A stretch of 64,000 nucleotides of DNA. Source: Octopus bimaculoides (lineage: Eukaryota). The notes beneath the pieces were generated by a model that ran no database searches, had not been told where the DNA came from, and worked only from the letters and a program-made list of their open reading frames with translations. Shown here piece after piece: positions 21,569-46,470 of this stretch. The number at the start of each line of letters is the position of its first letter. The first letter of the stretch is position 1. Made by a program: the position numbers and the translations under genes. The DNA is taken from contig NC_069001.1 of NCBI RefSeq assembly GCF_001194135.2, forward strand, positions 4,900,996 through 4,964,995, read 5' to 3'.

Positions 21569-22416
21569 TTACAACTGTTCATAGCCTGCTGTAGGTTTAC
21601 GAAAACGGTAAAAGAGATAGACAAGAGCCAGAAGCAAAATTCCAATACCAATGCCTGCTGCAATTCCACCACCAAACGAAGCACCATCAAATGAGCTCTT
21701 TTCAGTCGAAGAGGGCGCTGCACTGCTTGTGACTGTACTGTGGTGGTCAGTGGTTTCATGACCCGGAGTAACTGTTGTGTAGTTTCCAGGAGTGGGTGTT
21801 GTGTAGTTTCCAGGAGTGGGTGTTGTGTGNNNNNNNNNNNNNNNNNNNNNNNNNNNNNNNNNNNNNNNNNNNNNNNNNNNNNNNNNNNNNNNNNNNNNNN
21901 NNNNNNNNNNNNNNNNNNNNNNNNNNNNNNNNNNNNNNNNNNNNNNNNNNNNNNNNNNNNNNNNNNNNNNNNNNNNNNNNNNNNNNNNNNNNNNNNNNNN
22001 NNNNNNNNNNNNGTAGTTTCCAGGAGTGGGTGTTGTGTAGTTTCCAGGAGTAACTGTTGTGTAGTTTCCAGGAGTGGGTGTTGTGTAGTTTCCAGGAGTG
22101 GGTGTTGTGTAGTTTCCAGGAGTAACTGTTGTGTAGTTTCCAGGAGTGGGTGTTGTGTAGTTTCCAGGAGTGGGTGTTGTGTGATTTCCAGGTGTAGTAG
22201 TCGAATGGTTACCTGGGGAACTTGTAGACTGTGTTGGATCATCAGTATGATTCCCATGGGCAGTAGGGGTAAGATCATGTGTGCTGGGTGTATATGTACT
22301 CTTGTGATCTGTGGTCTTTGTATGAACATCAGTTGTTGATATTAAATGTGTAGTGCTATGACTTGCAGTTGTGATTGGAGTAGACTGTTCGGTAGATATA
22401 CTAGTAGTACTTTTCT
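21569..22416 (-). CDS. CD164/porimin-like sialomucin terminal exon 1 (Thr/Ser stalk, TPGNYTTP repeats, TM, YEQL tail); contains a gap
   Basis: Acceptor gtataatttcag at 22417 (phase 1). Encodes KSTTSISTEQ...(TTPTPGNY)n...STEKSSFDGASFGGGIAAGIGIGILLLALVYLFYRFRKPTAGYEQL*. The FD-x-SF-GG motif before the TM and the terminal YxxL are CD164/porimin hallmarks. N gap 21830-22011 lies within the repeat, so the frame across it is assumed. Confidence 0.85.
21769..22190 (-). repeat. 24-bp coding minisatellite (plus unit GTGTAGTTTCCAGGAGTGGGTGTT) encoding TTPTPGNY/TTVTPGNY
   Basis: About 3 units left and 7 units plus one NHT variant right of an N gap; variant order is V,P,P periodic. Confidence 0.95.
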
Positions 22417-22699
22417 CTGAAATTATACAAGAAACAAATAAAGACTTGTTAAAACATAAGGAACAAAAAATATTTCCATAATTTTATGAAAATATTTAAT
22501 AGACATACCTTAAGTGTTTCATTAACTCTTTGCCTAGTGTAAAAAGGCAGGATGCACATGTAGAGGCAACACCACATGTCCACTTACTAGCCAATGCAGC
22601 ACAAAGGCTGTTGTATATGAGGCAAAGGTGATGTGAAAGGAACTTAGCAGGCAAACAGACATGCAATGATATGTGGATATGATAGAATATCCCTTCAGT

Positions 22700-22900
22700 A
22701 CCAGATCCAATGACCGTAAGTCTTCTTAAATACTTAAGAGAGGCAAAATATCACAGCCTCGGCTAGGCATGCATGGTCATTGAAGGAAAGAGCCATGAAT
22801 GTCAAGTGGAGAATGCTAGAGAGGTTCAAACCTTACTTTAATAGTTGCAGGAGGTGCAGTCTATGCCTAGCAGAAGAAAAAAAAAACTATAGTAAAGAAC
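22700..22900 (+). mobile_element. Penelope-like element fragment (GIY-YIG region C-terminus)
   Basis: Encodes HAWSLKERAMNVKWRMLERFKPYFNSCRRCSLCLAEEK, matching the PLE W-x-LK...W..L...PY....RC-x-LC-x-x-EK motif; degenerate. Confidence 0.7.
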
Positions 22901-23838
22901 TCTATTCACCTGAACACCTACTTAAACTGCAAATACAACGTCTTCTTTCCTTGCCCACATGAAAGGAAATATAGGATTAGTTACCTGCTGACTGCATCAT
23001 GAATATAATTGTTAGAACTTTCACCATAGATACCTCACATCACCACAGTTTGAGTGTTCAACACAATCATTACCACATCCAGCTTTACATGAAAACATGG
23101 TTTTAAGATGTGACACCCACCCCAGCCTCTCTTTCCACACACACACTTTGCACACATATCCACATCACACCACCCACACCCAAGCCACAACCCCCACTTT
23201 GCTGGCAGTCACCCTTCACACCATGAGGGTAATTCATCTTGTTTTTTTTTTTTTTGTACAAAGGGGCATAACTCTTGATGAATTTCCCTCTACCTTCTCG
23301 TGGTTTTTTTAAACATAGTACTCACAAATTGGATGTGATATTACTTGTCTCCAATAGCAGAGTACCATCACTAAATTTTCCCAAGCAACCTCTCTGATAA
23401 GCACCATCTTAGGTTATCACCTAACTCATGCATACAAAACCAATTGGAAAAAATAAGCTGGAATGCATCCTTAGTGAAGTACAATATAAATATGGACTTT
23501 TCTTTTACTTGTTTCAGCTATTGAACTATGGCCATGCTGGAGTACCACCTTGAAGGGCTTTTGTCTTTTTAGTCAAGCAAATCCCCTTCAGTATGTCTCT
23601 TTTAACATATATACATAAGTACAATGCACAGAAGTTCGTTTGGTAAGCACAAGGTTTCTGTTTCAGTCCCACAGCCTGGTAGCTCTGGCAAGTGTTTTCT
23701 TCTAGGACTCTCGACTAACCAATGCCATGTGAGTGAATTGCGTAGATGGGAACTGAGTGGAAACTCTGTGGAAGCGAACTAAAACCCTTCGAAAACAGTG
23801 CTACAGCATGTCCACAATCCACTGACTGTAAAAAGTAA

Positions 23839-23895
<57 letters not shown>

Positions 23896-23963
23896 GTATT
23901 ATAAAGATAGATAGATAGCGAGACATACATATGTGTGTGTATGTATATACATATATATATATT

Positions 23964-24038
<75 letters not shown>

Positions 24039-24862
24039 GTATGTATGTTTATCTGTGTATATGAGATGCTGGGATTAAATGAGCTTGAAATTTTGTCCAT
24101 ATTTCCAATTGTCCACAAGACATGCTACATATCAGCTGAAGACATTCCAGAAATTTACAGGCTTAAAACAATTGTATAAATACACGCATAAATAAAATAA
24201 AATGAAATAAAATAAAATAAAATAAAATAAAATAAAATAAAATAAAAGCAAATAAATAAGCGAAGAGAAAATATGACCACAATGATTGAGTTAATCAACC
24301 TTATTTTATTAATCTACACATCTGTGACATTATGTTTTGGGAAAGAAATGTTTGTGTTAGAATTGCTGTTCCAAAATATTTCTTATCACAATATATAGAC
24401 ATTTCTGACAAAATATTTATCGTTAGCTACTTTGCAATAATTAATACACACATAACAGTTGCCAGGAATGTTTAATATGCAAACAGTACATCTATCTACA
24501 CCACAAAACCTAGCAATAACTTTATATACATTCGGTAGTTTAAATTAGGTGCCCTTTCCTCAGCACCTAGCTATACTACTGTGTATGTGTGTGTGTGTGT
24601 ATATATATCAATTTAAATAAACAACCAAAAGAGCTACAATTAGTTTCATGGCGTATTTATATAAATGCACCTGTTCAGGTATCATAAAAGCATGAAACTA
24701 TAAATAGCTGTTTTGGTTGTGTATTTAAATTGATGTTTATCTCTCACTGGATGGAATACTATTTTTCTTTTGTTGATTCTACCTCTATTGGATCTTTAAA
24801 CTATCTATTATCTATATCTATCTATGTCTGTCTATCTATCTATTTATCTACCTATCCAGTAA

Positions 24863-24897
<35 letters not shown>

Positions 24898-25217
24898 NNN
24901 NNNNNNNNNNNNNNNNNNNNNNNNNNNNNNNNNNNNNNNNNNNNNNNNNNNNNNNNNNNNNNNNNNNNNNNNNNNNNNNNNNNNNNNNNNNNNNNNNNNN
25001 NNNNNNNNNNNNNNNNNNNNNNNNNNNNNNNNNNNNNNNNNNNNNNNNNNNNNNNNNNNNNNNNNNNNNNNNNNNNNNNNNNNNNNNNNNNNNNNNNNNN
25101 NNNNNNNNNNNNNNNNNNNNNNNNNNNNNNNNNNNNNNNNNNNNNNNNNNNNNNNNNNNNNNNNNNNNNNNNNNNNNNNNNNNNNNNNNNNNNNNNNTAT
25201 ATATATATATATATTGG

Positions 25218-25250
<33 letters not shown>

Positions 25251-25683
25251 ATATAAAATTAGTGAATTGTTTAGCAAATTTAAGTCCTTCAGGAAGAAGG
25301 GTTTTGATATAGAAAGGTAAAAATCTATGATGTCAGATTGTGTGAATCTATGTAATTGTACTTATGGTCATTCGTGTAGATATGGATATAAATTTTGTTG
25401 AAAAGCTAGGTATTTTCTTTTTTGATTTGATACATTGTTGACTTTTTTTGTTGTTTCTGTTTTTTTTTTCTTCTTTCCTTTTTTTTTTGTATGTGTTTTC
25501 CAATTTTCAAAAAAAAAACAAAAAAAAAACAGGGAAAATGTCACCGGAAAGTCTTCATCGCTTATCATTTAAACCATTCCTTTGTTTGAACACTGTCTAC
25601 TGAAAGAGAGAGCATTGCATAGCACCAATACCAATATCAAAAAGCGAATTCTTGTGAGGAGCGGATGACAGTCGAAATGTGTC

Positions 25684-26057
25684 TTAACATTCCTCATAGG
25701 CAGGATTAGGTTTGCGGCAGTAATAGAAGAGATAGAGGAGACAGAGAAGCAAAATTGCAATTCCAATACCAGCTGCAATTCCACCACCAAAGGAAGCACC
25801 ATCAAAGGTGCTCTTTTCAGTTGTAGAAGGTCCTACACTGGTTGAAACTGTGCTGTGCTGGTTGGTGGTCTTTTGACCAGGTGTTGTGATTGTATGGTTA
25901 CCAGGTGTGGTAGATGTCTCTGGACTACCTGTATGATTACCTGTAGTGTCTGTGTGGGGTGAAGACGTGTGAGGAATGGTAGTGGAGCTTGAGTGTCCTG
26001 TGCTCAGCTTCGTACTAGCTGATGAAGTTGCTTCAGTTGTAGCAGGAGTGGTGGGCT
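25684..26057 (-). CDS. CD164/porimin-like sialomucin terminal exon 2 (stalk, TM, YEEC tail)
   Basis: Acceptor gtgtaatttcag at 26058 (phase 1). Encodes PTTPATTEATSS...TTEKSTFDGASFGGGIAAGIGIAILLLCLLYLFYYCRKPNPAYEEC*; clear paralog of 21569-22416. Confidence 0.9.
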
Positions 26058-26453
26058 CTGAAATTACACACAAAGCAAAAAAAAAAAAAAAAAAAAAANN
26101 NNNNNNNNNNNNNNNNNNNNNNNNNNNNNNNNNNNNNNNNNNNNNNNNNNNNNNNNNNNNNNNNNNNNNNNNNNNNNNNNNNNNNNNNNNNNNNNNNNNN
26201 NNNNNNNNNNNNNNNNNNNNNNNNNNNNNNNNNNNNNNNNNNNNNNNNNNNNNNNNNNNNNNNNNNNNNNNNNNNNNNNNNNNNNNNNNNNNNNNNNNNN
26301 NNNNNNNNNNNNNNNNNNNNNNNNNNNNNNNNNNNNNNNNNNNNNNNNNNNNNNNNNNNNNNNNNNNNNNNNNNNNNNNNNNNNNNNNNNNNNNNNNNNN
26401 NNNNNNNNNNNNNNNNNNNNNNNNNNNNNNNNNNNNNNNNNNNNNNNNNNNNN

Positions 26454-26534
<81 letters not shown>

Positions 26535-26535
26535 T

Positions 26536-26566
<31 letters not shown>

Positions 26567-26572
26567 ACTTAC

Positions 26573-26592
26573 TTGGAATTGGATTTGGCTTT
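26573..26592 (-). CDS. Putative 20-nt microexon of the sialomucin gene (KPNPIP)
   Basis: ttatatgatag|AAAGCCAAATCCAATTCCAA|gtaagt; joins exon 26057 in frame only if the preceding exon ends in phase 2. Confidence 0.35.
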
Positions 26593-26649
26593 CTATCATA
26601 TAATAATATAACTAAGGTACTGCACTGTGGGACTGAACCCAAAACCGTA

Positions 26650-26724
26650 TAGATGGATAGATAGATAGATAGATAGACAGACAAACAGACAGATAGATAG
26701 ATAAATAGACAGATAGGTAGATAA

Positions 26725-26788
<64 letters not shown>

Positions 26789-26872
26789 ACAGACAGATAG
26801 ATAGATAAATAGACAGATAGGTAGATAAATAAATAGATAGATAGATAGATAGATAGATAAATAAATAGATAC
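26650..26872. repeat. Imperfect (GATA)n/(GACA)n tetranucleotide array
   Basis: Visible directly. Confidence 0.95.
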
Positions 26873-27521
26873 ATGATGGGTTTCTTTTAGTTTCTGTCTA
26901 CTAAATCCCCTTACAAGGCTTTAGCTGATTTGGGACTATACTCGAAGGTACCTCCCCAAGGAGCCACACTGTGGTGCTGAACTCAAGACAATATGATTGC
27001 CTAAGATACATATATATATATATGTATGTATTTATGCATGTATGGATGCATGTATGTATATGTTTATCAAACACGGATGGCAACACATGCGCACATAATG
27101 ATACACATCATAGAAGAGCAGAATGGAGTGAGTGGAGCAAGAGCACACACAAATACGAAAAGTGTCACTGAAGAGGTCACATATGTGTGATGGAAGATTT
27201 TCAGACAATGGACATGAGTTAAAAATAAGAACAGCAGTAAACGAGTGAAGAAGAAATATATAGTGTGTGTGTGTGACCATCCTGAAATACAATATCTATA
27301 TATATACATACATACATACATATATATATATGTATATATATAGCTGATGAAGGAAAATGTTCTCTATGTGGCTTGTGTGTTTTCTGTACTCTGCTTATTA
27401 TCATTTTCTTGTCTACGTTTTGTTTGCAATGTCCTGTACCCAGATATGCACCTATATATACAGGTAGACGTAGGTATGCACATACTTGTACGTATATATG
27501 CATATACTCATTTATTATTTG

Positions 27522-27553
<32 letters not shown>

Positions 27554-27909
27554 GTAATTTAAGATTAGGTAGGGTATATAATACCACTTGCTAAAATCAA
27601 AGTCATTGCTCCAAAAACCACCATAAAAATTGTGATATATATATATATATATATATATAATTGAAATTTACAGAAAACAAAAGATGAAGACAGGTGAGGA
27701 AACAACGAGTAGGTGTATTGGTTTGATACTCGGTAAGAATGGAAGAGTCTTTGATGTTTTGAACCAAAACTCTTCGGTAAAAAGGATTGACATGTTAAAA
27801 AAAAATGGAGAGTGAACAAAAACGAAACTAAGGGAAAATGATTTAATATATGTATATATTATATATATATATATATATATTATATATATGTATATATAAC
27901 ATACATACA

Positions 27910-27967
<58 letters not shown>

Positions 27968-27972
<5 letters not shown>

Positions 27973-28209
27973 ATTTTAAAGAGTTCCAACTATGTTTTTT
28001 ATGTTTTATTTATATTCTTGTAAAATTAATGTGGGATATAGAATATATAATATATAATATAAAAATAAATGGTAAAATGAAATGAAGTATTGAAATAACA
28101 ATTTTTTTAATATTATATATTATATATTCCATATTCTATATCCCACATTAATTTTACAAGAATATAAATAAAACATAAAAAACAGAGTTGGAATTCTTTT
28201 AAATAAAAT
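27968..28209. repeat. AT-rich fold-back element; solo arm at about 53098-53218
   Basis: AGAGTTCCAACT...AATGTGGGATATAGAATAT followed by its reverse complement. Confidence 0.85.
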
Positions 28210-28554
28210 AATATATTCCTCTATACACGATCATACAAAACCCATTTTTTGTATCTATTTTTTATTCACACACACACACACNNNNNNNNNNNNNNNNNNN
28301 NNNNNNNNNNNNNNNNNNNNNNNNNNNNNNNNNNNNNNNNNNNNNNNNNNNNNNNNNNNNNNNNNNNNNNNNNNNNNNNNNNNNNNNNNNNNNNNNNNNN
28401 NNNNNNNNNNNNNNNNNNNNNNNNNNNNNNNNNNNNNNNNNNNNNNNNNNNNNNNNNNNNNNNNNNNNNNNNNNNNNNNNNNNNNNNNNNNNNNNNNNNN
28501 NNNNNNNNNNNNNNNNNNNNNNNNNNNNNNNNNNNNNNNNNNNNNNNNNNNNNN

Positions 28555-28578
28555 ATTTGCCGACACAATGTGGTGTAC
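28555..28578 (-). CDS. Putative Cys-containing exon start running into an N gap (STPHCVGK...)
   Basis: catcttttatag|GT ACA CCA CAT TGT GTC GGC AAA, in frame with the phase-1 signal exon; the remainder is in gap 28282-28554. Confidence 0.4.
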
Positions 28579-28746
28579 CTATAAAAGATGATGTTTAAGC
28601 CCCATGGAAAACATCTTTTCCAGCTGGTATGATACATAATAGCTAATTATACAGTACATAGAAGCAAAACAACAAAATAATATATGAGAAAATTGTGTGT
28701 GTGTAAAAGAAACTGTATGTGTATGTGATGTGTGGTTAATACTTAC

Positions 28747-28831
28747 TGTTAGTATTACTTTGTCCATGGGCCAAATTGCATACCAAGGCCAAACATACCA
28801 CTGCTATCACAACTACACATTTCCCCAACAT
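28747..28831 (-). CDS. Signal-peptide first coding exon A of the sialomucin locus
   Basis: Encodes [28 protein letters not shown] then A|gtaagt (phase 1); classic n/h/c regions with likely AHG-Q cleavage; purine-rich leader. Confidence 0.85.
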
Positions 28832-29058
28832 TGTTTCCTTTTGATTCTTACTCTTTCTTCTTCTTCTTCTTTTCTTTTCTTTCCACCTGCTTGTCCTTCA
28901 CTCTATCTGTTTCAGCAAACTAGATCCGGTTCTGTTATTTTATGCTTCTTGTATATGTATATGTATATATATATATGTATATATATATATTTATATTTAT
29001 CTGTTTATATATTCACTCATGCACAAGGAGACACTAACTACCAGCGTGTATATATATA

Positions 29059-29104
<46 letters not shown>

Positions 29105-29769: not shown

Positions 29770-29800
<31 letters not shown>

Positions 29801-29805
29801 TTTAT

Positions 29806-29836
<31 letters not shown>

Positions 29837-29837
<1 letters not shown>

Positions 29838-30458
29838 CAGGTCATCCCATAAGTTATGTCCGAATTTTGAATAAAGAAGACAAGTAATCAAATGTTATAT
29901 TTAATTGAAATTTAATCATCAATGTGCTTCCCCTGATTATCTACGACTTCCTTCCATCTATTGACAAGCTTTTTAATCCCATCAATGTAAAACTCTTTTG
30001 GTTTCAAAGTGAAGAATTCTGAAATGTTAGTTTCGACCTTCTCCTGGCTCGCAAAAGTTATTTCCCCCAAGTGATTCTGTAAACTACAAAACAAATGGTA
30101 GTCTGAAGGAACAAGGTTGGGAGAATGAGGTGGATGAGGAATTTTTTCCCAACCAAGCTCTTCGATCTTCTGTGATGAGATCTTTGCAGTGTGTCATCAG
30201 GCATTGTCCTGATGAAACATCACTCCTTTTTGATTCACTAAAGCGGGTCTTTTTTCTTCAAAGCTTGGTTCAAACGCTCTAATTTCTGACAATAGACTTG
30301 AGCATTGATTGTTGCATTAGGTGGTAACAATTCAAAGTGAATTACTCCTTTGCAATCCCACCAGATAGAGAGAAGAACCTTTTTTTCCATGAAGTTCCCT
30401 TCTCGGTTGTGGTTGAGCTTTTTCCCTTTTACCAAGCTTTGTACTGTACTCTGCTGCA

Positions 30459-30508
<50 letters not shown>

Positions 30509-30600
30509 TGTGGTCTGATGTTGTTAGCACACATCTCGTCCTGATATAGGTTGTTTCTCACTATGAAATCGTCCACGATCTTATAGTGTATACACGATTC
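29837..30600 (-). mobile_element. Degenerate mariner (Mos1/Hsmar-like) transposase fragment with one terminal repeat
   Basis: Encodes KKVLLSIWWDCKGVIHFELLPPNATINAQVYCQKL and FYIDGIKKLVNRWKEVVDNQG; end TA-TCAGGTCATCCCATAAG; (TA)n inserted at about 30462-30506; stops and frameshifts. Confidence 0.85.
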
Positions 30601-31927
30601 CATTCTGGGCCCTTAGATTTATTTCACAGCAGCTGTTATAAAACGAACTCATTCTTTTTTATTCAAGATTTTAGTAGCATCGTGGATAACATGAAAGCTC
30701 TCTGTGAAGTAGAAGTCACATGATTTTAATCGGTTCTTAAATCTCTCTATCTTATTTAACGCAGTCTTTGTGATGATAGTGGTTGCTTTTTTCTGTCTTT
30801 CAGTTTTCAAATAGGCTTTGAAAATGTTGTCCTGTTTTCCAAGTGATGACCACAGAAAGTGATGACGTCAGTACCAATAACATTTGAAGGAATTCCCTCT
30901 AAGCCCAGCTCATCTTATTGCTCAAGTGACATCGTCCTAGAACTCAATGATTCTTTTTCCTTAGTATTTGATCTTCAGAGGGAAAAATTTAGTGATTACA
31001 TATTTGAATAATCTTGCATTGTGGTTTATGAGGGAATGAGAAAGAATTTTTGAGCAGCTTTAGCACACTTTAATGGTGTTTCTATTAAACAACTTGTAAA
31101 ATTTATGGTTGCTCGTGGTATGTCTTTTTTCCTATCAGGAGACAGACATACTTTATAACACTGGTATTTATGGCAATGTTGCATGGTCGATTATACGATA
31201 TAAAATATATTTTCTATGTTTTGATGATGGTTACTAACTGCCGTTGATGAACGCTTTATTAGGTTTTAGTAACCCACTGAAGTTATTGTGAAACTCGTTG
31301 CAAGTAGCTTCATTGGTGGATAATGCAGTTACCTTCTTGGTCAAGCTTGTCAGAACATGATAAGCATACATTCACACAATACATACACACACTCACATAC
31401 ATATGTATTAACGTGCGTGTCTGGTGCAATCACACACAAACACATATAAACCTACATACGTGTGTGTGAGTGTCTGTTTCCTTCTATTTATAAATTTATG
31501 TTTCTGCATGTACACATATAAATACACAAACACACACATACACACATTCGCATATAGGTATGTATATGTATTTACAGAGAACACTGAATGAGGCGGGAGA
31601 AAAAGTGCGGGGAAAGTGATACAGGGAAAGATATGAGGGCCAGTCATTTATGTAATTTACATAAATTACATGATAATGATATCTTAATCTTATCAGACTT
31701 GTGACAGCAATAACAAGGGTGTCACATGAGAAGTAAAACAATTTTAGGGAAATAGACGAAAACACACACATACACGCACAAACACGTATACACAAGCACA
31801 CACACAAACACACATGCACACACAAACACGTACACACAAACACGTACACATACACACTCACACATACAAACACAAACACATGCATGGCCATACACATATA
31901 CACACATAAACACACGTATGTAACATA

Positions 31928-35018: not shown

Positions 35019-35790
35019 CGAGGGGCTACCCCAAAGAAACTGGAATTTTGCAATCGCCTTCAAAGTGTTCTCCATTTGAAGCAATGCATCGGTCCAGGTG
35101 CGTTTTCCATTATCCGAAGCGGTCCTGGAACTCTTGTGAAGTGATTCCTTTTAACGCCTCCATCATTTTTTTCAACATCTTCCACATCTTCAAATTCCGT
35201 AGCTCCAGCTTTCTTCACCAGTGATGACCTTTGAAAAAAGGTCCGGATCAACTTCCAACTTTTCTTTGAGTTCGTGACACGCATTCAGTCGTGACTGCTT
35301 TTGATCTTCCGGAAGCAATCGACACACACATTTTGCTGCAAACTTTTTTTTCATTCGCAATTCCTCCTCACTCAAAATTTGTTGCCAGGAGCTCCAGGAC
35401 TCACCAATCATATCAAAAAGCTCGTCAATTATTTGGTGGCTGTCCTTCAAGATCAGTTCATGAATTTTCATGATGTTTTCATTCATTCGGGAAGTTGACG
35501 GTCGTTCGGAACGAAGTTGATCTTCAAGGTGTTTGAAGCTTGTCAACTGTTTCCACCGCCGTTTAGAAGCACGCTGTTCCTTCATTTCAGCCATTACAAA
35601 AATTGATAAACAGACGAGAAGCACTACAAAACAAAGACGCACCATGTTGCAATACAGCCTAAGCCAACGCCGCTGGTTGGCAGACTGATGCCTGAGGGTC
35701 GCATCAAGTGGCTTCTAGAGGCGGAAGCCTGAACTAAAACGGGTTTGCCCTGCAGCGAACGCTTCCAGTTATTTTGGAGGTACCCCTTCG
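35019..35790 (-). mobile_element. Internally deleted mariner element with both TIRs and TA flanks
   Basis: TA|CGAGGGGCTACCCCAAAGAAACTGGAA ... TTCCAGTTATTTTGGAGGTACCCCTTCG|TA. Minus strand encodes SERPSTSRMNENIMKIHELILKD...LPEDQKQSRLNACHELKE...FSKVITGEESW. Confidence 0.88.
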
Positions 35791-36980: not shown

Positions 36981-37830
36981 GACGGGCTTCTTTCAGTTTC
37001 CATCTACCAAATCCACTCACAAGGCTTTGATCGGCTCGAGGCTATAGAAGAAGACATTGCCCAAGATGCCACGCAGTAGGACTGAACCCAGAACCACGTG
37101 GTTTGTAAGCAAGCTACTTACCACACAGCCACTCCTACGCCTAATGATAATAATAATAATAATTCTCTGATATAGATCCAGGAACTGGCTCTTATGGTTT
37201 CTGATCTTAACTGATTGGAAGTGTTATCATGTACATTGTTATGTTTTGGTATAAAAGATGGGCTACAGCAAATGTTCTGCTCAATACCACAGATTTGATT
37301 GTCAGTTATTTGACCTTAACCATTTGAGCATGTCCTTTATTGGCTGACGATATGTGCATCTCTGATCACGAGCGAGATGGGCTACTCGACCTGAAGAAAA
37401 TTCTAACTGGCCCCCACCTACAAGGCCATACGCTGTTTATCTTGATATGAGATCACCAAATCGCGTGCATATTGTGATGCATGTGCCTGGTATACCCCTA
37501 TCAGACGGGTGGACCTGATAGGCATACTGGGCTTCGTTATTTGTACCCTAGTATCACTTTGATGGCATGCACTGCTGTCGCACTCAATAATAATAATAAC
37601 GATGAAATCTTGGAAATAACTAATTTTTAAAAATATCTTAAATTTGAAAAGTGGTTATTATAAAGGACTTTGAATTGAAATAAATTATTGAACAAACTTC
37701 GGTGTTTTTGTGGTGTTACCTTTTTATTAATTTTTTTTTTTAGGGACAGGAGTTTACAAAAGGACCAGAAGAATCAGAGCATATATTGATATAAGCAGTC
37801 TTTGGGCTGTTCCATTGTTATATGATGTAC

Positions 37831-37932
37831 CTTTGCTAGTTGTGCTATATAATGGCTTCTTAGTAACATGTGGCGTCGATCTGTTAAAGTCTGGACTGTC
37901 GGATGACAACGTTGAGATGACGGTCGTAAAAT
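37831..37932 (-). CDS. Symmetric (phase 1-1) Ser/Thr-rich mucin exon, 102 nt
   Basis: atttattactgcag|AT TTT ACG...AGC AAA G|gtacat; encodes FTTVISTLSSDSPDFNRSTPHVTKKPLYSTTSK, with an NRS sequon. Confidence 0.65.
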
Positions 37933-38316: not shown

Positions 38317-39030
38317 CAGGGGTTCTTAACTATTTTTTTTTATCTATGGACCCCTTTGATAACTATTTTAGGATCTTTTTTAAAACGGAGGCCACATTTT
38401 TCATTAACGAAACACTTTGAAACTGGGAACACTGGTAGAATGTGTCATATAAAACATGTTTTTCTCTTAGACTTCTTTAAAAAAAAAGAAATCCATAAAT
38501 TATTCCATGTTAAAGTTGTCGTATTTCTGTAATTTCAACCAATCACTGACGTCCATTCAGCCGATATACATTAAGTGCCGACTACATAAACAAACGATTC
38601 TGAAACAATTAACCCTAACCCTAACCCTAACTCTAACCCTAGGGTTAGGGTTAAGGTTAGGGTTAGGGTTAAAGCAAATTTAAAATGAAAAAAGCAAATA
38701 AAACGAAGAATCGTTTGTTTATGTAGTCGGCACTTAATGTATATCGGCTGAATGGACGTCAGTGATTGGTTGAAATTATCGAAATAAGACAATTTTTTAC
38801 ATGAAATAAATTCGAATACAAAAATATTTTTCTGTTCTATAACACAAGATAGATAAGTATACGAAGTTTGAAAGTCTTTCGGTACCAAAAGCACTACGTA
38901 AAACATTAATGGAAAATGGGGCCCCCGTTTTAAAAAAGATCCCTATTTTATTCTGTTGGACCCCCATAGCCATTCAATGTTTAAAAACTAGCTTTATATA
39001 TTCTTCTTTCAAAATTCCTGTTTTATTTTT
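38317..39030. mobile_element. hAT-like MITE (CAGGGGTTCT end) interrupted by the 38371-38942 element
   Basis: CAGGGGTTCTTAACTATTTTTTTTATCTATGGACCCC is the reverse complement of the right end of the 63404-63725 element; its sequence resumes after the insertion. Confidence 0.7.
38371..38942. mobile_element. 572-bp non-autonomous TIR element with 8-bp TSD and an internal telomeric palindrome
   Basis: Ends GGATCTTTTTTAAAACGG... and ...CCGTTTTAAAAAAGATCC; CTATTTTA at 38363-38370 and 38943-38950; inner inverted arms about 38513-38600 and 38707-38795; (TAACCC)n|(GGGTTA)n core at 38609-38672. Confidence 0.88.
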
Positions 39031-39224: not shown

Positions 39225-39730
39225 AAATCGATACTCACGAAATAATCATGCTTTCTGATTTTTTAATGCTAAAAACCTTCCTGACGACTGTCTATGTAAT
39301 CCCGAAAAATATCGTAACCACTGGTCGAGCCGTCTGGCCGTAAAGAGGGAACAGACAGACGGACATAACGCCCATTATAATAAGATAGCAAATCTGCCCA
39401 TCGACGGTGGGAAATAAAGGGATAGCATCGCAATTCTAAACCCTCTAAATTCACGAAGTATACGGTGGGGTGGGGATATCCAGAGTTGATCTGCGTTGCA
39501 GGAATTTTAACAGAAACAAAAAAAAGATTAAAGGTAATTTATTAATACAAAACTCAATATCCACTAAATAATCATATTTTTTCTCATTTTTTTCGCTAAA
39601 AACCTTCCTGATTAGCATCTCCCTAGTCCCGAAGAGCATCGTGGCCATTGGTCCAGCCGTTTGATCGTGAAGAGGGAACAGACAGGCAAGCATACGAACA
39701 GACGGACATAACACACATTATAATAAGATT
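39225..39730 (+). mobile_element. Two tandem copies of a non-autonomous Helitron/Helentron-like repeat
   Basis: Both contain GCTAAAAACCTTCCTGA...AGCCGT...GAGGGAACAGACAG...ACGGACATAAC...ATTATAATAAGAT; classification from remembered signatures only. Confidence 0.5.
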
Positions 39731-40178
39731 CCATCTCCCCTAAGTTGGTTACTGCCGCTGGGTCCGGCAGAAGAAGCCCGCTTATTTTGCAAATAACTAA
39801 CATACGTCACGGTCATACAACCATCCACCGTACAGGAACGAAGTTCGCTTAGGGAGTGCAAAACCAGATCCAAAATTTTTATGAACAAATTCGATATTTT
39901 AAGATCTTAATAACAAAACAAGACCAGGTATAATAGTAATAATAATAATTATCATATTTGTACAACAATCAAATCAGATAAATTCAATAACGGAAAAGTA
40001 ATGTGTGTGTGTGTGTGTGGCCTGTGTGTTTTCTGTGCTCTATTTATGTTCTGTTTCTCATTTTGTCCACGTTTTTTTGTAACGTCCTGTACCCAGATAT
40101 GCATCTATATATACATGTAGATGTAGGTATGTACACACATGCACGTATATATGCATATACTCACATATTATTTGTATT

Positions 40179-40254
<76 letters not shown>

Positions 40255-43221
40255 ATTTATCAAATCTGACCCTGAGGAGATACAATATTCCATATTTTAT
40301 AACATACAGNNNNNNNNNNNNNNNNNNNNNNNNNNNNNNNNNNNNNNNNNNNNNNNNNNNNNNNNNNNNNNNNNNNNNNNNNNNNNNNNNNNNNNNNNNN
40401 NNNNNNNNNNNNNNNNNNNNNNNNNNNNNNNNNNNNNNNNNNNNNNNNNNNNNNNNNNNNNNNNNNNNNNNNNNNNNNNNNNNNNNNNNNNNNNNNNNNN
40501 NNNNNNNNNNNNNNNNNNNNNNNNNNNNNNNNNNNNNNNNNNNNNNNNNNNNNNNNNNNNNNNNNNNNNNNNNNNNNNNNNNNNNNNNNNNNNNNNNNNN
40601 NNNNNNNNNNNNNNNNNNNNNNNNNNNNNNNNNNNNNNNNNNNNNNNNNNNNNNNNNNNNNNNNNNNNNNNNNNNNNNNNNNNNNNNNNNNNNNNNNNNN
40701 NNNNNNNNNNNNNNNNNNNNNNNNNNNNNNNNNNNNNNNNNNNNNNNNNNNNNNNNNNNNNNNNNNNNNNNNNNNNNNNNNNNNNNNNNNNNNNNNNNNN
40801 NNNNNNNNNNNNNNNNNNNNNNNNNNNNNNNNNNNNNNNNNNNNNNNNNNNNNNNNNNNNNNNNNNNNNNNNNNNNNNNNNNNNNNNNNNNNNNNNNNNN
40901 NNNNNNNNNNNNNNNNNNNNNNNNNNNNNNNNNNNNNNNNNNNNNNNNNNNNNNNNNNNNNNNNNNNNNNNNNNNNNNNNNNNNNNNNNNNNNNNNNNNN
41001 NNNNNNNNNNNNNNNNNNNNNNNNNNNNNNTATATATATATATATATTTCTGATCATCATCATCATCATTTAACGTCCGTTGTCCATGCCGACATGGGTT
41101 GGACGGTTTGACCAGGGATGGTAAGCTGGAAGGCTGCACCAGGTTCCATACTGATTTGGCATGATTTCTATAGCCGGGTGCCTTTCCTAACGCCAACCAT
41201 TCTCAGAGTGTGATGGGTCCTTTTACGTGCCATTTGTGTGACACACATACACGTGTGCACTGACGTGCACGCAGATACACACACACACTCAATCACGCAC
41301 ACATACATGCACACACACGTACACGTGCGCACGCGGGCACACACACACACATACACACACGCACTCTCTCATACACATACACATACATGAGCACACATAC
41401 ATGCACACACATATACATGCGCACACATATACATATACACACATACCTGCGCACATTTGTACACATACACATGCACACACATACACATATATGCACACAC
41501 TTGCACACACATACATGTGCGCATTCAGTCAAACGCACACACACATACACACATATGCATACACAAGACGTGCTTCTGCACAGTTTCCATCAAATCCACT
41601 CAGACGGTATTGGTTGGCCCATTGTTATAGTTTGTAGGAGGAAACACTTGCGCAATAGAATTGAACCTGAAATCACATGGCAGCAAAAAGAGCTTCTTAA
41701 CCACACAACCATTAAAACCAATGGTCAAGAAAAAGATTTTAATCACATATTTTTTTCAGGATTTGTGTTGTCTGGGTTTCAACAACCAAGGTGTCCTTCA
41801 GGATTTTCAGAACGGAAGGGTGGATTTGGTTACTGTTTCTNNNNNNNNNNNNNNNNNNNNNNNNNNNNNNNNNNNNNNNNNNNNNNNNNNNNNNNNNNNN
41901 NNNNNNNNNNNNNNNNNNNNNNNNNNNNNNNNNNNNNNNNNNNNNNNNNNNNNNNNNNNNNNNNNNNNNNNNNNNNNNNNNNNNNNNNNNNNNNNNNNNN
42001 NNNNNNNNNNNNNNNNNNNNNNNNNNNNNNNNNNNNNNNNNNNNNNNNNNNNNNNNNNNNNNNNNNNNNNNNNNNNNNNNNNNNNNNNNNNNNNNNNNNN
42101 NNNNNNNNNNNNNNNNNNNNNNNNNNNNNNNNNNNNNNNNNNNNNNNNNNNNNNNNNNNNNNNNNNNNNNNNNNNNNNNNNNNNNNNNNNNNNNNNNNNN
42201 NNNNNNNNNNNNNNNNNNNNNNNNNNNNNNNNNNNNNNNNNNNNNNNNNNNNNNNNNNNNNNNNNNNNNNNNNNNNNNNNNNNNNNNNNNNNNNNNNNNN
42301 NNNNNNNNNNNNNNNNNNNNNNNNNNNNNNNNNNNNNNNNNNNNNNNNNNNNNNNNNNNNNNNNNNNNNNNNNNNNNNNNNNNNNNNNNNNNNNNNNNNN
42401 NNNNNNNNNNNNNNNNNNNNNNNNNNNNNNNNNNNNNNNNNNNNNNNNNNNNNNNNNNNNNNNNNNNNNNNNNNNNNNNNNNNNNNNNNNNNNNNNNNNN
42501 NNNNNNNNNNNNNNNNNNNNNNNNNNNNNNNNNNNNNNNNNNNNNNNNNNNNNNNNNNNNNNNNNNNNNNNNNNNNNNNNNNNNNNNNNNNNNNNNNNNN
42601 NNNNNNNNNNNNNNNNNNNNNNNNNNNNNNNNNNNNNNNNNNNNNNNNNNNNNNNNNNNNNNNNNNNNNNNNNNNNNNNNNNNNNNNNNNNNNNNNNNNN
42701 NNNNNNNNNNNNNNNNNNNNNNNNNNNNNNNNNNNNNNNNNNNNNNNNNNNNNNNNNNNNNNNNNNNNNNNNNNNNNNNNNNNNNNNNNNNNNNNNNNNA
42801 ATAATAAATGCCCGGATGCAGTACCAGGCAGTGGCTCTCATAGCTTCTCATCTTAACTGATTGGAAGTGTTATCATGTACATTGTTATCATGTACGTCAG
42901 ATTGATCTCCGATAAAAGTTTCTGGTGTGCAGAAATCTTTGGGGTTTGAATAATTCACCTCTGGAAGCATGGCTGTTTCGTTCATCATCCTTAAACAAGC
43001 CGTATTCAGGGGCCTTTTGAATAGGATGAGCCACTCCAACTGAAGATAATTCTAACTGGGCCTCACCTGCAAGGTCATGCACTATTTACGTTGATATACG
43101 ACCACCATGTCGCGCACATATGGTTGTGATGCATGTGCCTGGTGTACCCTTATCAGACGGGTAGTCATGATGGGTATACTGGGCTTTGTTTATTTGTATC
43201 CCAGTGTCACTTTCATCTCAT

Positions 43222-43390
43222 GCAATGCTTCCGCACTTCCTATCATAGTAGGTGCCTTAGGTATAATAAAAAAATATTCAGACAAATACATAACAAAAAC
43301 ACCAGGACTTACAAATATATATAACATACAGAAAATTGCACTACTGGGCACTGCACACATCCTATGCAAAATACTTTCAATACAGTAACC
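43222..43390 (+). mobile_element. 3' fragment of an RLE-type non-LTR retrotransposon (R4/Dong-like)
   Basis: Encodes PIIVGALGIIKK...IQKIALLGTAHILCKILSIQ*. Confidence 0.75.
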
Positions 43391-43604
43391 ATAAGAACAT
43401 CACAGCAAACCACAGCACATACCCAAGGCGCACAGAGCTGCGCTCAGTAGTGAAGTGAAAGCTCGTTATAAAAATAAAACTACTGAACAATAATAATAAT
43501 AATAATAAATTAAGTACCAGCTGTGCACTGGGGATCGATCTAATTGCCTGTCCCCTCCCTCAAAATTTCAGGCCTTGTGTTTAGAGTAGAAAAGATTATC
43601 TTAC

Positions 43605-43859
43605 TTGGAGTGTCTGTGCTGTGATGGCTTGGTCCTGTTGTTGTCTCTTGAGCTGGAGACTGTGTGTTGTGAGCAGTTTGTGTAGTGTGTCTACCAGATG
43701 AAGTTGTGTCATGAGACTGGCTGCTGGTTTTTACGTCTGTGCTCTGTGAACTATGATCTGTGACGATGGTTGTTTTGTCTGTTGTTAATTTCCTGGTATG
43801 TTGGCTTCCGGTGGATGTTACTTCAGACGACTTGTGCACGTGGACTTTTGTGATTCTTG
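43605..43859 (-). CDS. Symmetric (phase 1-1) Thr/Ser/His-rich mucin exon, 255 nt
   Basis: T-run...aaaactag|CA AGA ATC...ACT CCA A|gtaaga; encodes RITKVHVHKSSEVTSTGSQHT...TTGPSHHSTDTP, similar in composition to the terminal-exon stalks. Confidence 0.8.
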
Positions 43860-44225
43860 CTAGTTTTTGTAAAAAAAAAAAAAAAAAAATAATGATGAGT
43901 GAAAATTTTGTCAATATAGTTATAACAGTGAAAAACTTACGCTTATATAACCAAAATAAATATCTAAATAAATGAGTGAACATTTTTCGCATTATCAAGG
44001 AAATATTTTGTTGCATGCTGGGAGTGTCATTAGGCCAATAATAAACATATGCACAAGCTCCTTTCACTTTTATCATCATTATTATTATTGTTATTATTAT
44101 CATTATCATAACTGTTATAATTTGTTATTATTATTGTTGTTGTTATTATTATTATTATTATTATTATTTTCATTATTATTATTATTGTTATCATTGTTAT
44201 TATTATTGCTGTTGTTGTTATTATT

Positions 44226-44278
<53 letters not shown>

Positions 44279-44298
44279 TATTATTATTATTATTATTA

Positions 44299-44644
44299 TT
44301 TTATGTTTGACTTTTGTTTTGCATTTGTACAAGTTGGATCCAAGTCTCACCCAGAGACCTCAAGAGACAACAAGTTAGAAGTTCATGTAGGTGTTATGCC
44401 TAGGGTACCATATATTTGGATTTGTACAGTTTTGTTCAAGTGAATGTTTAAGAAACCATATTATTATTATTATTATTATCATCCTTGTCATAATAATAAT
44501 AATAATGATAATGATAATAATAATAGTAATAATAATAATAATAATAATGATAATAATAATAATAATAACTTGTTGTCTCTTGAGGTCTCTGGGTGAGACT
44601 TGGATCCAACTTGTACAAATGCAAAACAAAAGTCAAACATAAAA
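44299..44644. repeat. 79-bp exact inverted duplication with a 188-bp spacer, embedded in (ATT)n/(AAT)n
   Basis: 44299-44377 is the reverse complement of 44566-44644. Confidence 0.93.
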
Positions 44645-46198
44645 TAATAATAATAATAATTATAATAATAATAATAATGATAATAATAATAATAATGATA
44701 ATTTCAAATTTTTCCATAAGGGCAGCAATTTTAGGGGGAGGGTAAGTCGATTTCGTTGACCCCAGTGTTTCACTGGTACTTAACGTATCGACCTCGAAAG
44801 GATGAAAGGCAAAGTCAACCTTGGCGAAATTTGAACTCAGAACATAGTGACAAACAAAACACCACTAAGCATTTTGTCCAGCACGCTAACGTTTCTGCAA
44901 GTTCACCACCATAATAATAATAATAATAATAATAATAAATGCCTGGATGCAGTACCAGGCAGTGGCTCTCATAGCTTCTCATCTTAACTGATTGGAAGTG
45001 TTATCATGTACATTGTTATCATGTACGTCAGATTGATCTCCGATAAAAGTTTCTGGTGTGCAGAAATCTTTGGGGTTTGAATAATTCACCTCTGGAAGCA
45101 TGGCTGTTTCGTTCATCATCCTTAAACAAGCCTTATTCAGGGACCTTTTGAATAGGATGAGCCACTCCAACTGAAGATAATTCTAATTGAGCCTCACCTG
45201 CAAGGTCATGCACTATTTATCTTGATATAAGACCACCATGTCTCGCACATATGGTTGTGATGCATGTGCCTGGTGTACCCTTATCAGACGGGTAGTCATG
45301 ATGGGTATACTGGGCTTCGTATATTTGTATCCTAGTGTCACTTTGATGGCATGCACTGCTGTCGCACTCAATAATAATAATAATAATGATGAAGATGATG
45401 ATGATAATGGTTCCAAATTTTGGCACAAGTGCAACAATTTGGGGGCAGGAGGATGAGTTGGTTACATTGACCCTAGTATGCAACTGGTACTCACAAGGCT
45501 TTGGTTGGCCCGAGGCTATAGCAGAAGACACTTGCTCAAGGTGCCACGCAGTGGGACTGAACCCGGAACCATGTGGCTGGTAAGCAATCTACTTACCACA
45601 CAGCCACTAATAATAATAATAATAATAATAATAACAACAACAACGACATTGAAAAATACCTTAGGAATGAGAACCCAAGTTTGAAATTTCCCCAAGACAC
45701 CTGATGAAGGCTGGAGGGTGTATCAGCCAAAACGTTGTGTTAACAAACAAGATGAGGACAAATATCCGTCAAATGTAAATAATGTAACTTCAACAATATG
45801 AACAACAGTGATAACATCCTATATTCTATACCAATTGAATCCCATCAAATGCCATAATGTCACTGAGTGAAACAATGGGTAGTTTTTGGTTATCTTACCC
45901 CCCCCCCCCATTAAAAAATTGGGTTTATGACCCTATATTTTACGAGAAATATCGGTACTTTTTGTTATTTCCTTCAACGTCAACAATACATTGAAGTATT
46001 GAATCAGAAGGATCTAACTCCTTTAATCCAATCTCTTTGTCCGCCATATAAACTCGATGTTTTTTTTTTTAGTGGGGAGGTAACCCAATTTTTTAATGGC
46101 AATTTTTTAATGGGGGTGAGATAACCAAAAAATACCAAACAAAGATAGACAACAACAGCAATGTTAACAATACCAACAATTCAAATAACGACAAATAC

Positions 46199-46301
46199 CT
46201 TTTGGGTCTACAGTTTTTGATACAACTTTGGTGTTTGCAACACATACCAAAGCAAGCGTGATGGCTGCCACAAAAATTAACATTCTAGACATTTTTTCCA
46301 T
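46199..46301 (-). CDS. Signal-peptide first coding exon B of the sialomucin locus
   Basis: Encodes MEKMSRMLIFVAAITLALVCVANTKVVSKTVDPK then G|gtattt (phase 1); shares LALVC with exon A; in frame with the 43859 exon; A-rich leader. Confidence 0.8.
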
Positions 46302-46460
46302 GTTTGTTTTGTTGTTGTTGTTCTTGTTTCGTTAGCTCTTGTTTTGTTTTGTTTTGGTTTTTTTTTGCTGTTTTTTTCTTTGTTTTTGTTAAAAGTAAGT
46401 GGCACGCTTGCTAGTGGTGGCTCTTGATGGAAGTCTGCGCCAGAGCTAATTCTCGTACCG

Positions 46461-46470
46461 CTATTTATAG
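46461..46470 (-). promoter_or_regulatory. TATA box (TATAAATAG) upstream of signal exon B
   Basis: Plus-strand ctatttatag, about 160 nt upstream of ATG 46301 and followed by an A-rich leader; position only. Confidence 0.45.

What the first reader, a model, noticed from the sequence alone, without database searches (positions are those of the whole stretch)
21569..46470. Possible combinatorial sialomucin locus: two signal-peptide first exons, phase-1 cassette exons and two alternative TM/tail last exons
Seen: on the minus strand, signal exon B (46301-46199), mucin exons 43859-43605 and 37932-37831, signal exon A (28831-28747), and TM terminal exons at 26057 and 22416. Both signal exons end in phase 1, both mucin exons are phase 1-1, and both terminal exons start in phase 1, so any upstream-to-downstream join stays in frame. 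I found no TM exon between B and A and no signal exon between the two terminal exons. Known: CD164/endolyn and porimin are type I sialomucins with FD-x-SF-GG before the TM. Inference: one locus could mix two promoters, optional stalk exons and two tails to make a family of glycocalyx or lysosomal mucins, rather than being independent tandem genes.
Basis: partly seen in the sequence, partly recalled or inferred. Interest (0 to 1): 0.82.

Follow-up and report, generated by a model that had tools for sequence, protein, structure and literature searches.

The report
Octopus endolyn-like mucin gene, multiple anchors
This is one octopus gene locus of the CD164/endolyn sialomucin family; public RNA data show two start exons feeding three alternative membrane-anchor endings, an interesting but not unprecedented kind of alternative splicing.

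Summary
All sit on the minus strand with AG/GT borders and phase 1. RNA from the same species confirms every border except one.

RNA contigs and reads show these joins:
- sigA (28747) to the TM1 exon (26057).
- sigB (46199) to muc1 (43859).
- muc1 (43605) to a 189-nt chitin-binding (CBM14-like) exon that is missing from the window and must lie in an assembly gap.
- That hidden exon to 37932, or to 26057.
- An internal 5' splice site inside the TM1 exon (25941, minor 25770) to the TM2 exon (22416).

The core idea therefore holds: one locus, two promoters, two transmembrane/tail endings, and joins across the units.

Three points need correction:
- "muc2" is not a cassette. Transcripts read through the proposed donor at 37831 and end near 37705, encoding a GPI-signal-like hydrophobic C-terminus. 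It is a third alternative terminal exon.
- TM2 was only ever reached through the first 117 nt (rarely 288 nt) of the TM1 exon, so joining is constrained rather than free.
- Unit B carries a cysteine-rich domain hidden in a gap.

The juxtamembrane, transmembrane and tail region matches Pfam MGC-24/CD164. Tail 2 ends in GYEQL, a canonical sorting motif. Tail 1 ends in AYEEC, which is not. A trafficking switch is inferred, not shown.

The parts
46199..46365 (-). First exon B. It comprises about 65 nt of 5'UTR plus the signal-peptide CDS 46301-46199 (MEKMSRMLIFVAAITLALVCVAN...) and ends in phase 1.
   Evidence: Sequence. The RNA join 46199->43859 is seen in contigs of X1 (805 nt), X10 (866 nt) and X9 (614 nt, depth 185). 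The transcript start is estimated from the 166-167 nt of contig upstream of muc1.
43605..43859 (-). Mucin exon 1 of unit B. It is 255 nt, phase 1-1 and Ser/Thr-rich.
   Evidence: Searches confirm both borders in RNA. It is 68% identical to the O. sinensis model.
41841..42799 (-). Assembly gap, the likeliest hiding place of a 189-nt phase 1-1 CBM14 (peritrophin-A)-like exon. The alternative hiding place is gap 40310-41030. The exon is seen only in RNA. It begins ...TGWCYCKNGT and ends ...WDQRNHTCIHA.
   Evidence: Loose ends at 43605 and 37937. X1 contig positions 424-607 have no counterpart in the window. tblastn with the O. sinensis domain finds no such exon in the sequenced DNA. The O. sinensis orthologue passes the Pfam CBM_14 cut-off.
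37705..37932 (-). The CDS runs 37932-37757 and ends ...STTSKGTSYNNGTAQRLLISIYALILLVLL. The stop is at 37756-37754 and AATAAA at 37728-37723. The C-terminus looks like a GPI-attachment signal.
   Evidence: Contigs of X1, X10 and X9 run through the 37831 GT and end at 37740, 37705 and 37720. Translation and poly(A) signal come.
28747..28978 (-). First exon A from an internal promoter. It comprises about 145 nt of 5'UTR plus the signal-peptide CDS 28831-28747 ([23 protein letters not shown]|QSNTN) and ends in phase 1.
   Evidence: X1 and X10 contigs start 232-236 nt upstream of the junction. Its expression is independent of unit B.
25228..26057 (-). Composite exon TM1. Read in full, it is a terminal exon encoding mucin stalk, FDGASFGGG, a TM segment and the tail YYCRKPNPAYEEC, with the stop at 25686-25684 and a 3'UTR of at least 455 nt. 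If an internal 5' splice site is used, it acts as an internal cassette. The sites are at 25941 (CAG|GTAATC, 117 nt) and 25770 (CTG|GTATTG, 288 nt), and both leave phase 1.
   Evidence: The acceptor is fed by sigA (19 and 13 reads plus contigs) and by the CBM14 exon (X9). The X9 contig graph branches at 25941-25970.
21370..22416 (-). Terminal exon TM2. It encodes a mucin stalk with a 24-nt tandem repeat (TPGNYTTP/V, 21773-22196, interrupted by gap 21830-22012), then FDGASFGGG, a TM segment and the tail YRFRKPTAGYEQL. The stop is at 21571-21569 and AATAAA at 21391.
   Evidence: The acceptor 22416 is joined only to 25941 and to 25770. For 25941: X22 14 reads, X23 4, X24 14, X9 depth 46.7, X29 depth 49.4. 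For 25770: 4 reads in X22.

Best explanation
This is a single complex locus of the CD164/endolyn (Pfam MGC-24) sialomucin family in an octopus, transcribed on the minus strand.

Two promoters give two signal-peptide first exons:
- Unit B comprises sigB, a mucin exon, and a CBM14-like cysteine-rich exon that lies in an assembly gap.
- Unit A is just sigA.

Three mutually exclusive 3' ends supply the membrane anchor:
1. A skipped-or-used terminal exon at 37932, whose hydrophobic end looks like a GPI signal.
2. The TM1 exon, with a transmembrane helix and a tail ending AYEEC.
3. The TM2 exon, with a transmembrane helix and a tail ending GYEQL.

The choice between TM1 and TM2 works like a composite terminal exon. 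If the transcript is cleaved and polyadenylated after TM1, the TM1 tail is made. If the internal 5' splice site at 25941 (rarely 25770) is used, only the first 117 (or 288) nt of that exon are kept as a stalk cassette and are spliced to TM2. All junctions are phase 1, so every observed join stays in frame.

Shown here: the exon joins, the independent expression of A and B, and the family match.

Inferred:
- The endings set where the protein goes. GYEQL is a canonical C-terminal G-Y-x-x-hydrophobic endocytic/lysosomal signal. AYEEC lacks the bulky last residue and should stay more at the cell surface. The GPI-like form should sit in the outer leaflet.
- The B head domain may bind chitin or a glycan.
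For: Exons, phases and splice consensus.

RNA joins:
- 28747->26057.
- 46199->43859 and 43605->hidden exon.
- Hidden exon->37932, with read-through to a poly(A) site.
- Hidden exon->26057 in X9, depth 38.8.
- 25941->22416 in five runs and 25770->22416 in one.

Expression of A and B is independent: X10 1149 against 14.8, X9 56.5 against 185.

No other first exon for TM2 is visible.

Cross-species support:
- O. sinensis XP_029649176.1 has the order sigB - CBM14 - muc1 - CBM14 - TM1 5' piece - TM2.
- The TM1 exon, its tail AYEEC and the CAG|GTAATC internal donor are conserved in another octopus contig.

Family evidence:
- Pfam MGC-24 scores 30.9 and 28.4 bits against a cut-off of 28.5.
- 11 of 12 relatives match MGC-24.
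- FDGASFGGG and a Tyr four to six residues from the C-terminus (at -4 in most relatives, giving Y-x-x-hydrophobic) are invariant across those relatives.

Literature on tails:
- Mutating Y or L of the CD164 YHTL motif retains the protein at the plasma membrane (PMC4510537).
- The C-terminal residue sets the surface/lysosome balance of the LAMP-2a/b/c splice forms (PMC2136218).
Against: - Short reads and short contigs do not phase promoter with tail. B->...->TM2 in this species is inferred from the O. sinensis model, and A->cassette->TM2 from read-depth balance in X22.
- The B->26057 join was seen as one 59-nt contig in one run. In X22 and X23 the listed loose ends at 26057 were all from sigA, and some lines were not shown.
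- Pfam scores sit at the gathering threshold and rest mostly on the juxtamembrane/TM segment.
- The GPI call is by eye (small residues NNG, short spacer, 14 hydrophobic residues to the end). No predictor was run.
- No localisation, glycosylation or chitin-binding data exist.
- A 1713-nt unspliced contig in X10 (22153 to about 23865, depth 125) is unexplained. It could be intron retention.
Confidence: 0.72

Rival explanations
1. There are two neighbouring genes rather than one. An upstream gene B encodes a GPI-like anchored CBM14 mucin and ends at about 37705. A downstream gene A runs from sigA to TM1 or TM2. The B->26057 transcripts would then be read-through (conjoined) by-products without a separate function.
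For: - B has its own terminal exon and poly(A) signal.
- A has its own promoter and is expressed independently.
- In X9 the B->GPI-exon join (depth 83.7) is about twice the B->26057 join (38.8).
- In X22 and X23 the listed partners of 26057 are sigA only.
Against: - The cross join makes up about a third of B output in X9, which is not a trace.
- It uses a clean phase-1 junction that keeps the frame.
- The O. sinensis RefSeq model joins the B exons to the TM2 ending in the same way.
- The resulting protein (mucin - Cys-rich domain - mucin - TM - YxxL) has the canonical CD164 layout (PMC4510537), and relatives P0003 and P0007 have CBM14 plus the same TM/tail in one protein.
Confidence: 0.2
2. 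These are ordinary independent tandem paralogs. Each signal exon would have its own TM exon, with the missing partners hidden in gaps, and no real sharing of exons.
For: - The TM1 and TM2 exons are clear duplicates, 79% identical over 188 nt.
- Many gaps could hide exons.
Against: - Every read or contig entering the TM2 acceptor comes from inside the TM1 exon.
- The CBM14 exon joins directly to 37932 or 26057.
- No signal-like exon lies in 22417-24897.
Confidence: 0.03
3. The cross-unit joins are artefacts of de Bruijn contig assembly or template switching between similar mucin sequences.
For: - The regions are low-complexity and repeated.
- The B->26057 evidence is a single short contig.
Against: - All joins fall exactly on AG/GT borders.
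- 25941->22416 is seen in raw reads of three runs and in contigs of two others.
- An independent annotation in another species shows the same joins.
Confidence: 0.03

Closest known systems
CD164 / endolyn / MGC-24 (vertebrate sialomucin; Pfam PF05283)
   Same: - Type I membrane mucin with a signal peptide.
[quoted passage not shown]
- F-D-x-x-S-F-x-G-G just before the TM helix.
- A short tail of about 13 residues with Y-x-x-hydrophobic at the very C-terminus (tail 2, GYEQL).
- Isoforms made by exon choice. Human CD164 skips exon 4 or 5 and has a non-membrane isoform (PMC1557671, PMC4510537).
   Different: - It has two promoters.
- It has a duplicated TM/tail exon used alternatively.
- It has a GPI-like third ending.
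- Its cysteine-rich module is CBM14/peritrophin-A-like and does not align to the N-terminal part of the MGC-24 profile.
- Tail 1 (AYEEC) lacks the hydrophobic last residue.
LAMP-2a/b/c
   Same: One gene with alternative last exons, each encoding a TM helix plus a short tail with G-Y-x-x-hydrophobic at the C-terminus. The last residue tunes the lysosome/surface distribution (PMC2136218).
   Different: - It is an unrelated luminal domain.
- The LAMP-2 alternative exons are simple alternatives, not a composite exon with internal 5' splice sites.
- LAMP-2 has no alternative promoter or GPI-like form.
Composite terminal exons such as immunoglobulin mu secreted/membrane switch, and TM-versus-GPI exon choice in NCAM (own knowledge, not checked here)
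   Same: - Competition between an internal 5' splice site and an upstream poly(A) site decides which C-terminus and anchor is made.
- Alternative exons give a lipid-anchored or a transmembrane form.
   Different: Here both outcomes of the composite exon are transmembrane forms with different tails, and the lipid-anchor-like ending belongs to a further upstream exon.
Octopus sinensis 'mucin-5AC-like isoform X2' XP_029649176.1
   Same: It is the orthologous locus. It has the same signal B, muc1, CBM14, TM1 5' piece and TM2 ending. Identity ranges from 64% to 81% by exon.
   Different: The model has a second CBM14 domain between the signal and muc1. That domain is absent from the window and from this species' transcripts. 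The database name is automatic, and the protein is not a gel-forming MUC5AC.

Membership tests
CD164/endolyn (Pfam MGC-24, PF05283) | Match to the family profile over the mucin II / juxtamembrane / TM / tail region | tested here: met
   - The TM2 exon fragment scores 30.9 bits and A-TM1 scores 28.4 bits against a cut-off of 28.5. Both are borderline.
- 11 of 12 aligned relatives match, best E 4.5e-8.
- FDGASFGGG is invariant in the alignment.
CD164/endolyn (Pfam MGC-24, PF05283) | Short cytoplasmic tail ending in Y-x-x-bulky hydrophobic | tested here: met
   Tail 2 ends GYEQL, and most relatives end YEVL, YNAM, YKTM or YNKM, while two (P0003, P0007) carry the Tyr one or two residues further in. 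Tail 1 ends AYEEC and does not meet this feature. That ending is conserved in a second octopus.
CD164/endolyn (Pfam MGC-24, PF05283) | [quoted passage not shown] | tested here: inconclusive
   - B isoforms have mucin, then a 63-residue Cys-rich exon, then mucin.
- Only the ends of that exon are seen in RNA.
- In O. sinensis the domain is CBM_14 and does not align with the MGC-24 profile N-terminus.
- A isoforms have no Cys-rich domain.
CD164/endolyn (Pfam MGC-24, PF05283) | Heavy O-/N-glycosylation with sialic acid; lysosomal/endosomal residence | not testable with these tools
   Only composition is available: 25-36% Ser+Thr and up to 13 N-x-S/T sites.
CBM14 / peritrophin-A chitin-binding domain (PF01607) | Six-cysteine domain matching the profile above the cut-off | tested here: inconclusive
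   - The O. sinensis orthologue scores 28.9 bits against a cut-off of 22.1.
- In this species the exon is in a gap. Only TGWCYCKNGT... and ...WDQRNHTCIHA are known.
GPI-anchored proteins | C-terminal signal: small omega residues, short polar spacer, hydrophobic stretch to the very end, no cytoplasmic residues | tested here: inconclusive
   ...YNNGTAQR-LLISIYALILLVLL-stop fits by eye. No GPI predictor was available, and a tail-less TM anchor is not excluded.
Composite terminal exon (works-like, not a protein family) | An internal 5' splice site upstream of the stop codon and poly(A) site, used in a fraction of transcripts | tested here: met
   - 25941->22416 and 25770->22416 joins.
- Full-length read-through to the TM1 3'UTR.
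- Depth drops downstream of 25941 in X22, X23 and X9.

The most novel reading that the evidence does not exclude
Promoter choice and three alternative anchors let one octopus locus display either a bare glycan stalk or a chitin-binding head. The display site could be a lipid-anchored surface form, a surface-retained TM form (AYEEC), or an endocytosed/lysosome-directed TM form (GYEQL). CBM14-bearing CD164-like proteins (P0002, P0003, P0007) would then be an undescribed family of membrane-bound chitin or glycan receptors in molluscs and perhaps other invertebrates.
Probability: 0.3. Interest if true: 0.6.

Novelty: new variant of a known kind. Interest (0 to 1): 0.45.

Why it matters
The locus shows a compact way of diversifying a cell-surface mucin in a cephalopod. 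A tandem duplication of the last exon became an alternative-tail system through an exonic 5' splice site, and an internal promoter and a lipid-anchor-like ending were layered on top.

If the tails sort differently, the locus is a natural experiment on the C-terminal Y-x-x-hydrophobic rule known from CD164 and LAMP-2.

It is also a practical warning. Gap-rich assemblies hide coding exons (here a whole domain), and automatic names such as 'mucin-5AC-like' mask CD164-family membership.

The finding does not open a long-standing question. Each mechanism involved is known elsewhere.

Tried and rejected
1. Laying reads on the whole 20-kb stretch failed. The first four attempts and a later retry hit a busy server. 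I therefore laid reads exon by exon and linked exons through loose ends and contig lengths.

2. tblastn hits of the O. sinensis CBM14 domain at 45062 and 42931 ('CTPETFIGDQSD') were rejected. They sit in two copies of an interspersed repeat, in a frame full of stops.

3. I tried to fetch the O. sinensis locus and its longer isoform X1. The protein is not on record for contig look-up, its cluster has one member, and searching with it found no X1.

4. I looked for a hidden signal exon for TM2 or a hidden TM exon for B in the sequenced DNA. None was found.

5. L001, the contig carrying P0001, turned out to be genomic or unspliced. It gives conservation of the acceptor, the internal donor and the tail, but no junction information.

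6. Literature searches for CD164 in octopus or for cephalopod peritrophin-mucins found nothing relevant.

7. The species was not determined, because run and organism names were coded. The nearest named protein is from Octopus sinensis.

Full report
**Observation**

The window has 36.8% G+C and 19 assembly gaps.

- sigB (46301-46199) and sigA (28831-28747) begin with ATG. They encode typical signal peptides and end one base into a codon.
- muc1 (43859-43605) is a Ser/Thr-rich phase 1-1 exon.
- The exons starting at 26057 and 22416 each encode a Ser/Thr/Pro-rich stalk, the motif FDGASFGGG, a hydrophobic helix and a short tail of about 13 residues. The tails end in AYEEC-stop and GYEQL-stop.

A six-frame scan finds only these two FD-x-SF-GG/TM exons in the 64 kb. 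No signal-peptide-like ATG exon with a phase-1 donor lies between them.

**Gaps**

Gap 21830-22012 lies inside the TM2 exon, within a 24-nt tandem repeat coding TPGNYTT(P/V). RNA contigs of two runs leave a repeat unit at 22119 and continue with exactly the sequence that follows the gap (...GTTACTCC|GGGTCATGAAACC...). This reads ...GNYTTVTPGHETTDHHS in frame. The reading frame is therefore continuous and only the repeat number is unknown.

The other gaps inside the finding fall in introns that are removed by observed joins, or at the end of the TM1 3'UTR. The exception is outside the finding's listed gaps. One of 41841-42799 or 40310-41030 must contain a real coding exon, described below.

**RNA evidence**

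Public RNA runs of the same species hold the exons. I therefore laid reads exon by exon and linked exons through the unmatched ends of reads and contigs.

1. sigA joins the 26057 acceptor.
   - This is supported by 19 and 13 raw reads in X22 and X23.
   - Contigs in X1 (1059 nt), X10 (804 nt, depth 1149) and X9 carry the 5'UTR, sigA, the whole TM1 exon and its 3'UTR.
2. sigB joins muc1 directly.
3. muc1 joins an exon that is not in the window.
   - Its first bases translate to TGWCYCKNGT and its last bases to WDQRNHTCIHA.
   - In the 805-nt X1 contig it occupies 184 nt plus 5 ambiguous bases. That makes 189 nt, so it is phase 1-1.
   - The contigs in three runs do not stop at the proposed donor 37831. 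They run on and end at 37740, 37720 and 37705.
   - The read-through frame gives ...STTSKGTSYNNGTAQRLLISIYALILLVLL-stop at 37756-37754, with AATAAA at 37728.
   - This exon is therefore an alternative 3'-terminal exon. Its end consists of small residues, a short polar spacer and 14 hydrophobic residues up to the stop, which looks like a GPI-attachment signal.
5. In X9 the hidden exon also joins the 26057 acceptor (59-nt contig, depth 38.8). This sits beside sigA->26057 (depth 56.5) and hidden exon->37932 (depth 83.7).
6. The TM2 acceptor 22416 is joined only to sites inside the TM1 exon.
   - The join to 25941 (CAG|GTAATC) is seen in X22 (14 reads), X23 (4), X24 (14), X9 (depth 46.7) and X29 (depth 49.4).
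   - The join to 25770 (CTG|GTATTG) is seen in 4 reads of X22.
   - Both internal donors leave phase 1, so the 117-nt or 288-nt piece acts as an in-frame cassette.
   - Depth in X22, X23 and X9 drops downstream of 25941, as expected.

No read or contig showed 28747->22416, hidden exon->22416, or any use of 37831.

**Independent promoters**

The ratio of A to B differs strongly between runs. In X10 it is 1149 against 14.8, in X9 56.5 against 185, and in X1 21.5 against 10.9. The A contigs of X1 and X10 begin within a few bases of each other, about 232-236 nt upstream of the junction. This fits a transcript start near 28978.

**Other species**

The only close named relative is Octopus sinensis XP_029649176.1, 'mucin-5AC-like isoform X2'. 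Its order is:

1. the sigB orthologue;
2. a CBM14 domain;
3. the muc1 orthologue;
4. a second CBM14 domain ending ...HTCIHAD;
5. 32 residues orthologous to the first 117 nt of the TM1 exon, ending ...PHTDTT exactly at the internal donor;
6. the TM2 exon orthologue ending DYEQL.

This is independent support for B-unit transcripts reaching TM2 through the TM1 cassette. The first CBM14 domain of that model is absent here. There is no gap between sigB and muc1, tblastn finds nothing real there, and the RNA joins sigB to muc1 directly.

A contig from another octopus (L001) carries the TM1 exon orthologue. It has the same acceptor, the same tail PNPAYEEC and the same CAG|GTAATC internal donor. The minor donor is not conserved.

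**Family**

Pfam MGC-24 (CD164) matches both TM exons at about the gathering score: 30.9 and 28.4 bits against 28.5.

An exhaustive search with the last 66 residues of the TM2 form found ten representatives. The clear relatives are small mucin-like type I proteins with an invariant FDGASFGGG before the helix. Most of them end in Y-x-x-hydrophobic at the extreme C-terminus: YEVL, YNAM, YKTM and YNKM. Two CBM14-bearing relatives, P0003 and P0007, instead end GYTQHT and GYDQHI. Eleven of twelve aligned members match MGC-24, and three also carry CBM14 domains (P0003).

The layout of the B-to-TM isoform is mucin, cysteine-rich domain, mucin, TM, short tail. This is the layout described for human CD164, which also makes isoforms by exon skipping (PMC1557671, PMC4510537). 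The cysteine-rich module here is CBM14-like and does not align with the MGC-24 profile. I therefore file the locus in the CD164 family on the basis of the C-terminal module only.

**Mechanism**

Shown:

- The locus has two first exons and three mutually exclusive endings.
- The middle ending is a composite exon that is either terminal or, through an exonic 5' splice site, internal.

Inferred:

- The endings set localisation. In CD164, mutating the Y or the L of YHTL retains the protein at the plasma membrane (PMC4510537).
- In LAMP-2, alternative last exons encode TM plus tail, and the C-terminal residue decides the lysosome/surface balance (PMC2136218).
- By that rule GYEQL should drive endocytosis and lysosomal delivery. 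AYEEC, conserved in two octopuses, should be a weak signal. The GPI-like form should be surface-bound without a cytoplasmic signal.
- The head domain may bind chitin. None of this was testable here.

**What remains open**

- Promoter-to-tail phasing needs long reads.
- The B->26057 join rests on one contig in this species plus the O. sinensis model.
- The TM1 poly(A) site is not in the sequenced DNA.
- A 1713-nt unspliced contig upstream of TM2 in X10 is unexplained.
- The hidden exon sequence is known only at its ends.

**Verdict**

Each mechanism has precedents: CD164 isoforms, LAMP-2 tails, composite terminal exons and TM/GPI switching. This is a new variant of known kinds and of moderate interest.

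Noticed in passing
window 10206-11282 and 13009-14124, + strand: Two long open reading frames (358 and 371 aa) look like exons of a neighbouring gene on the opposite strand. The first matches Pfam VWA_3 (28.1 bits). The second has no Pfam match.
   Followed up: partly
window 30241-30603 and 35193-35645, - strand: Mariner-type transposase remnants lie inside the long intron between the 37932 exon and sigA. The first matches Pfam Transposase_1 at 79 bits. The second is an N-terminal-like ORF with no Pfam hit.
   Followed up: partly
window 38610-38671: Five TAACCC units abut five TAGGGT units. This is a head-to-head pair of telomere-like hexamer runs in an intron.
   Followed up: no
window 44931-45368 and 42800-43237: A 438-bp direct duplicate at 96% identity flanks muc1. 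The second copy stops at the edge of gap 41841-42799. Older copies at about 86% identity elsewhere (4445-4768, 37376-37599) show it is an interspersed repeat. The young pair may mark a local duplication related to the one- versus two-CBM14 difference from O. sinensis.
   Followed up: partly
window 22153 to about 23865 (run X10): A 1713-nt unspliced RNA contig (depth 125) runs from the TM2 exon up into the intron. No in-frame ATG or signal peptide lies there. It may be intron retention or pre-mRNA.
   Followed up: partly
window 28854: A 3-nt insertion (TTC) relative to the assembly occurs in the sigA 5'UTR. It lies in a GAA/TTC repeat and is present in all three contig runs and in 5 of 15 reads of X22. 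It is a length polymorphism or an assembly error.
   Followed up: no
L002 (JGI sample 3300019054) and P0007: Transcript-like contigs from unidentified organisms encode a signal peptide, two or three CBM14 domains, a mucin stalk, SFDGASFGGG, a TM helix and a tail ending GYTQHT or GYDQHI. The CBM14 plus CD164-like-anchor architecture therefore exists outside Octopus.
   Followed up: partly
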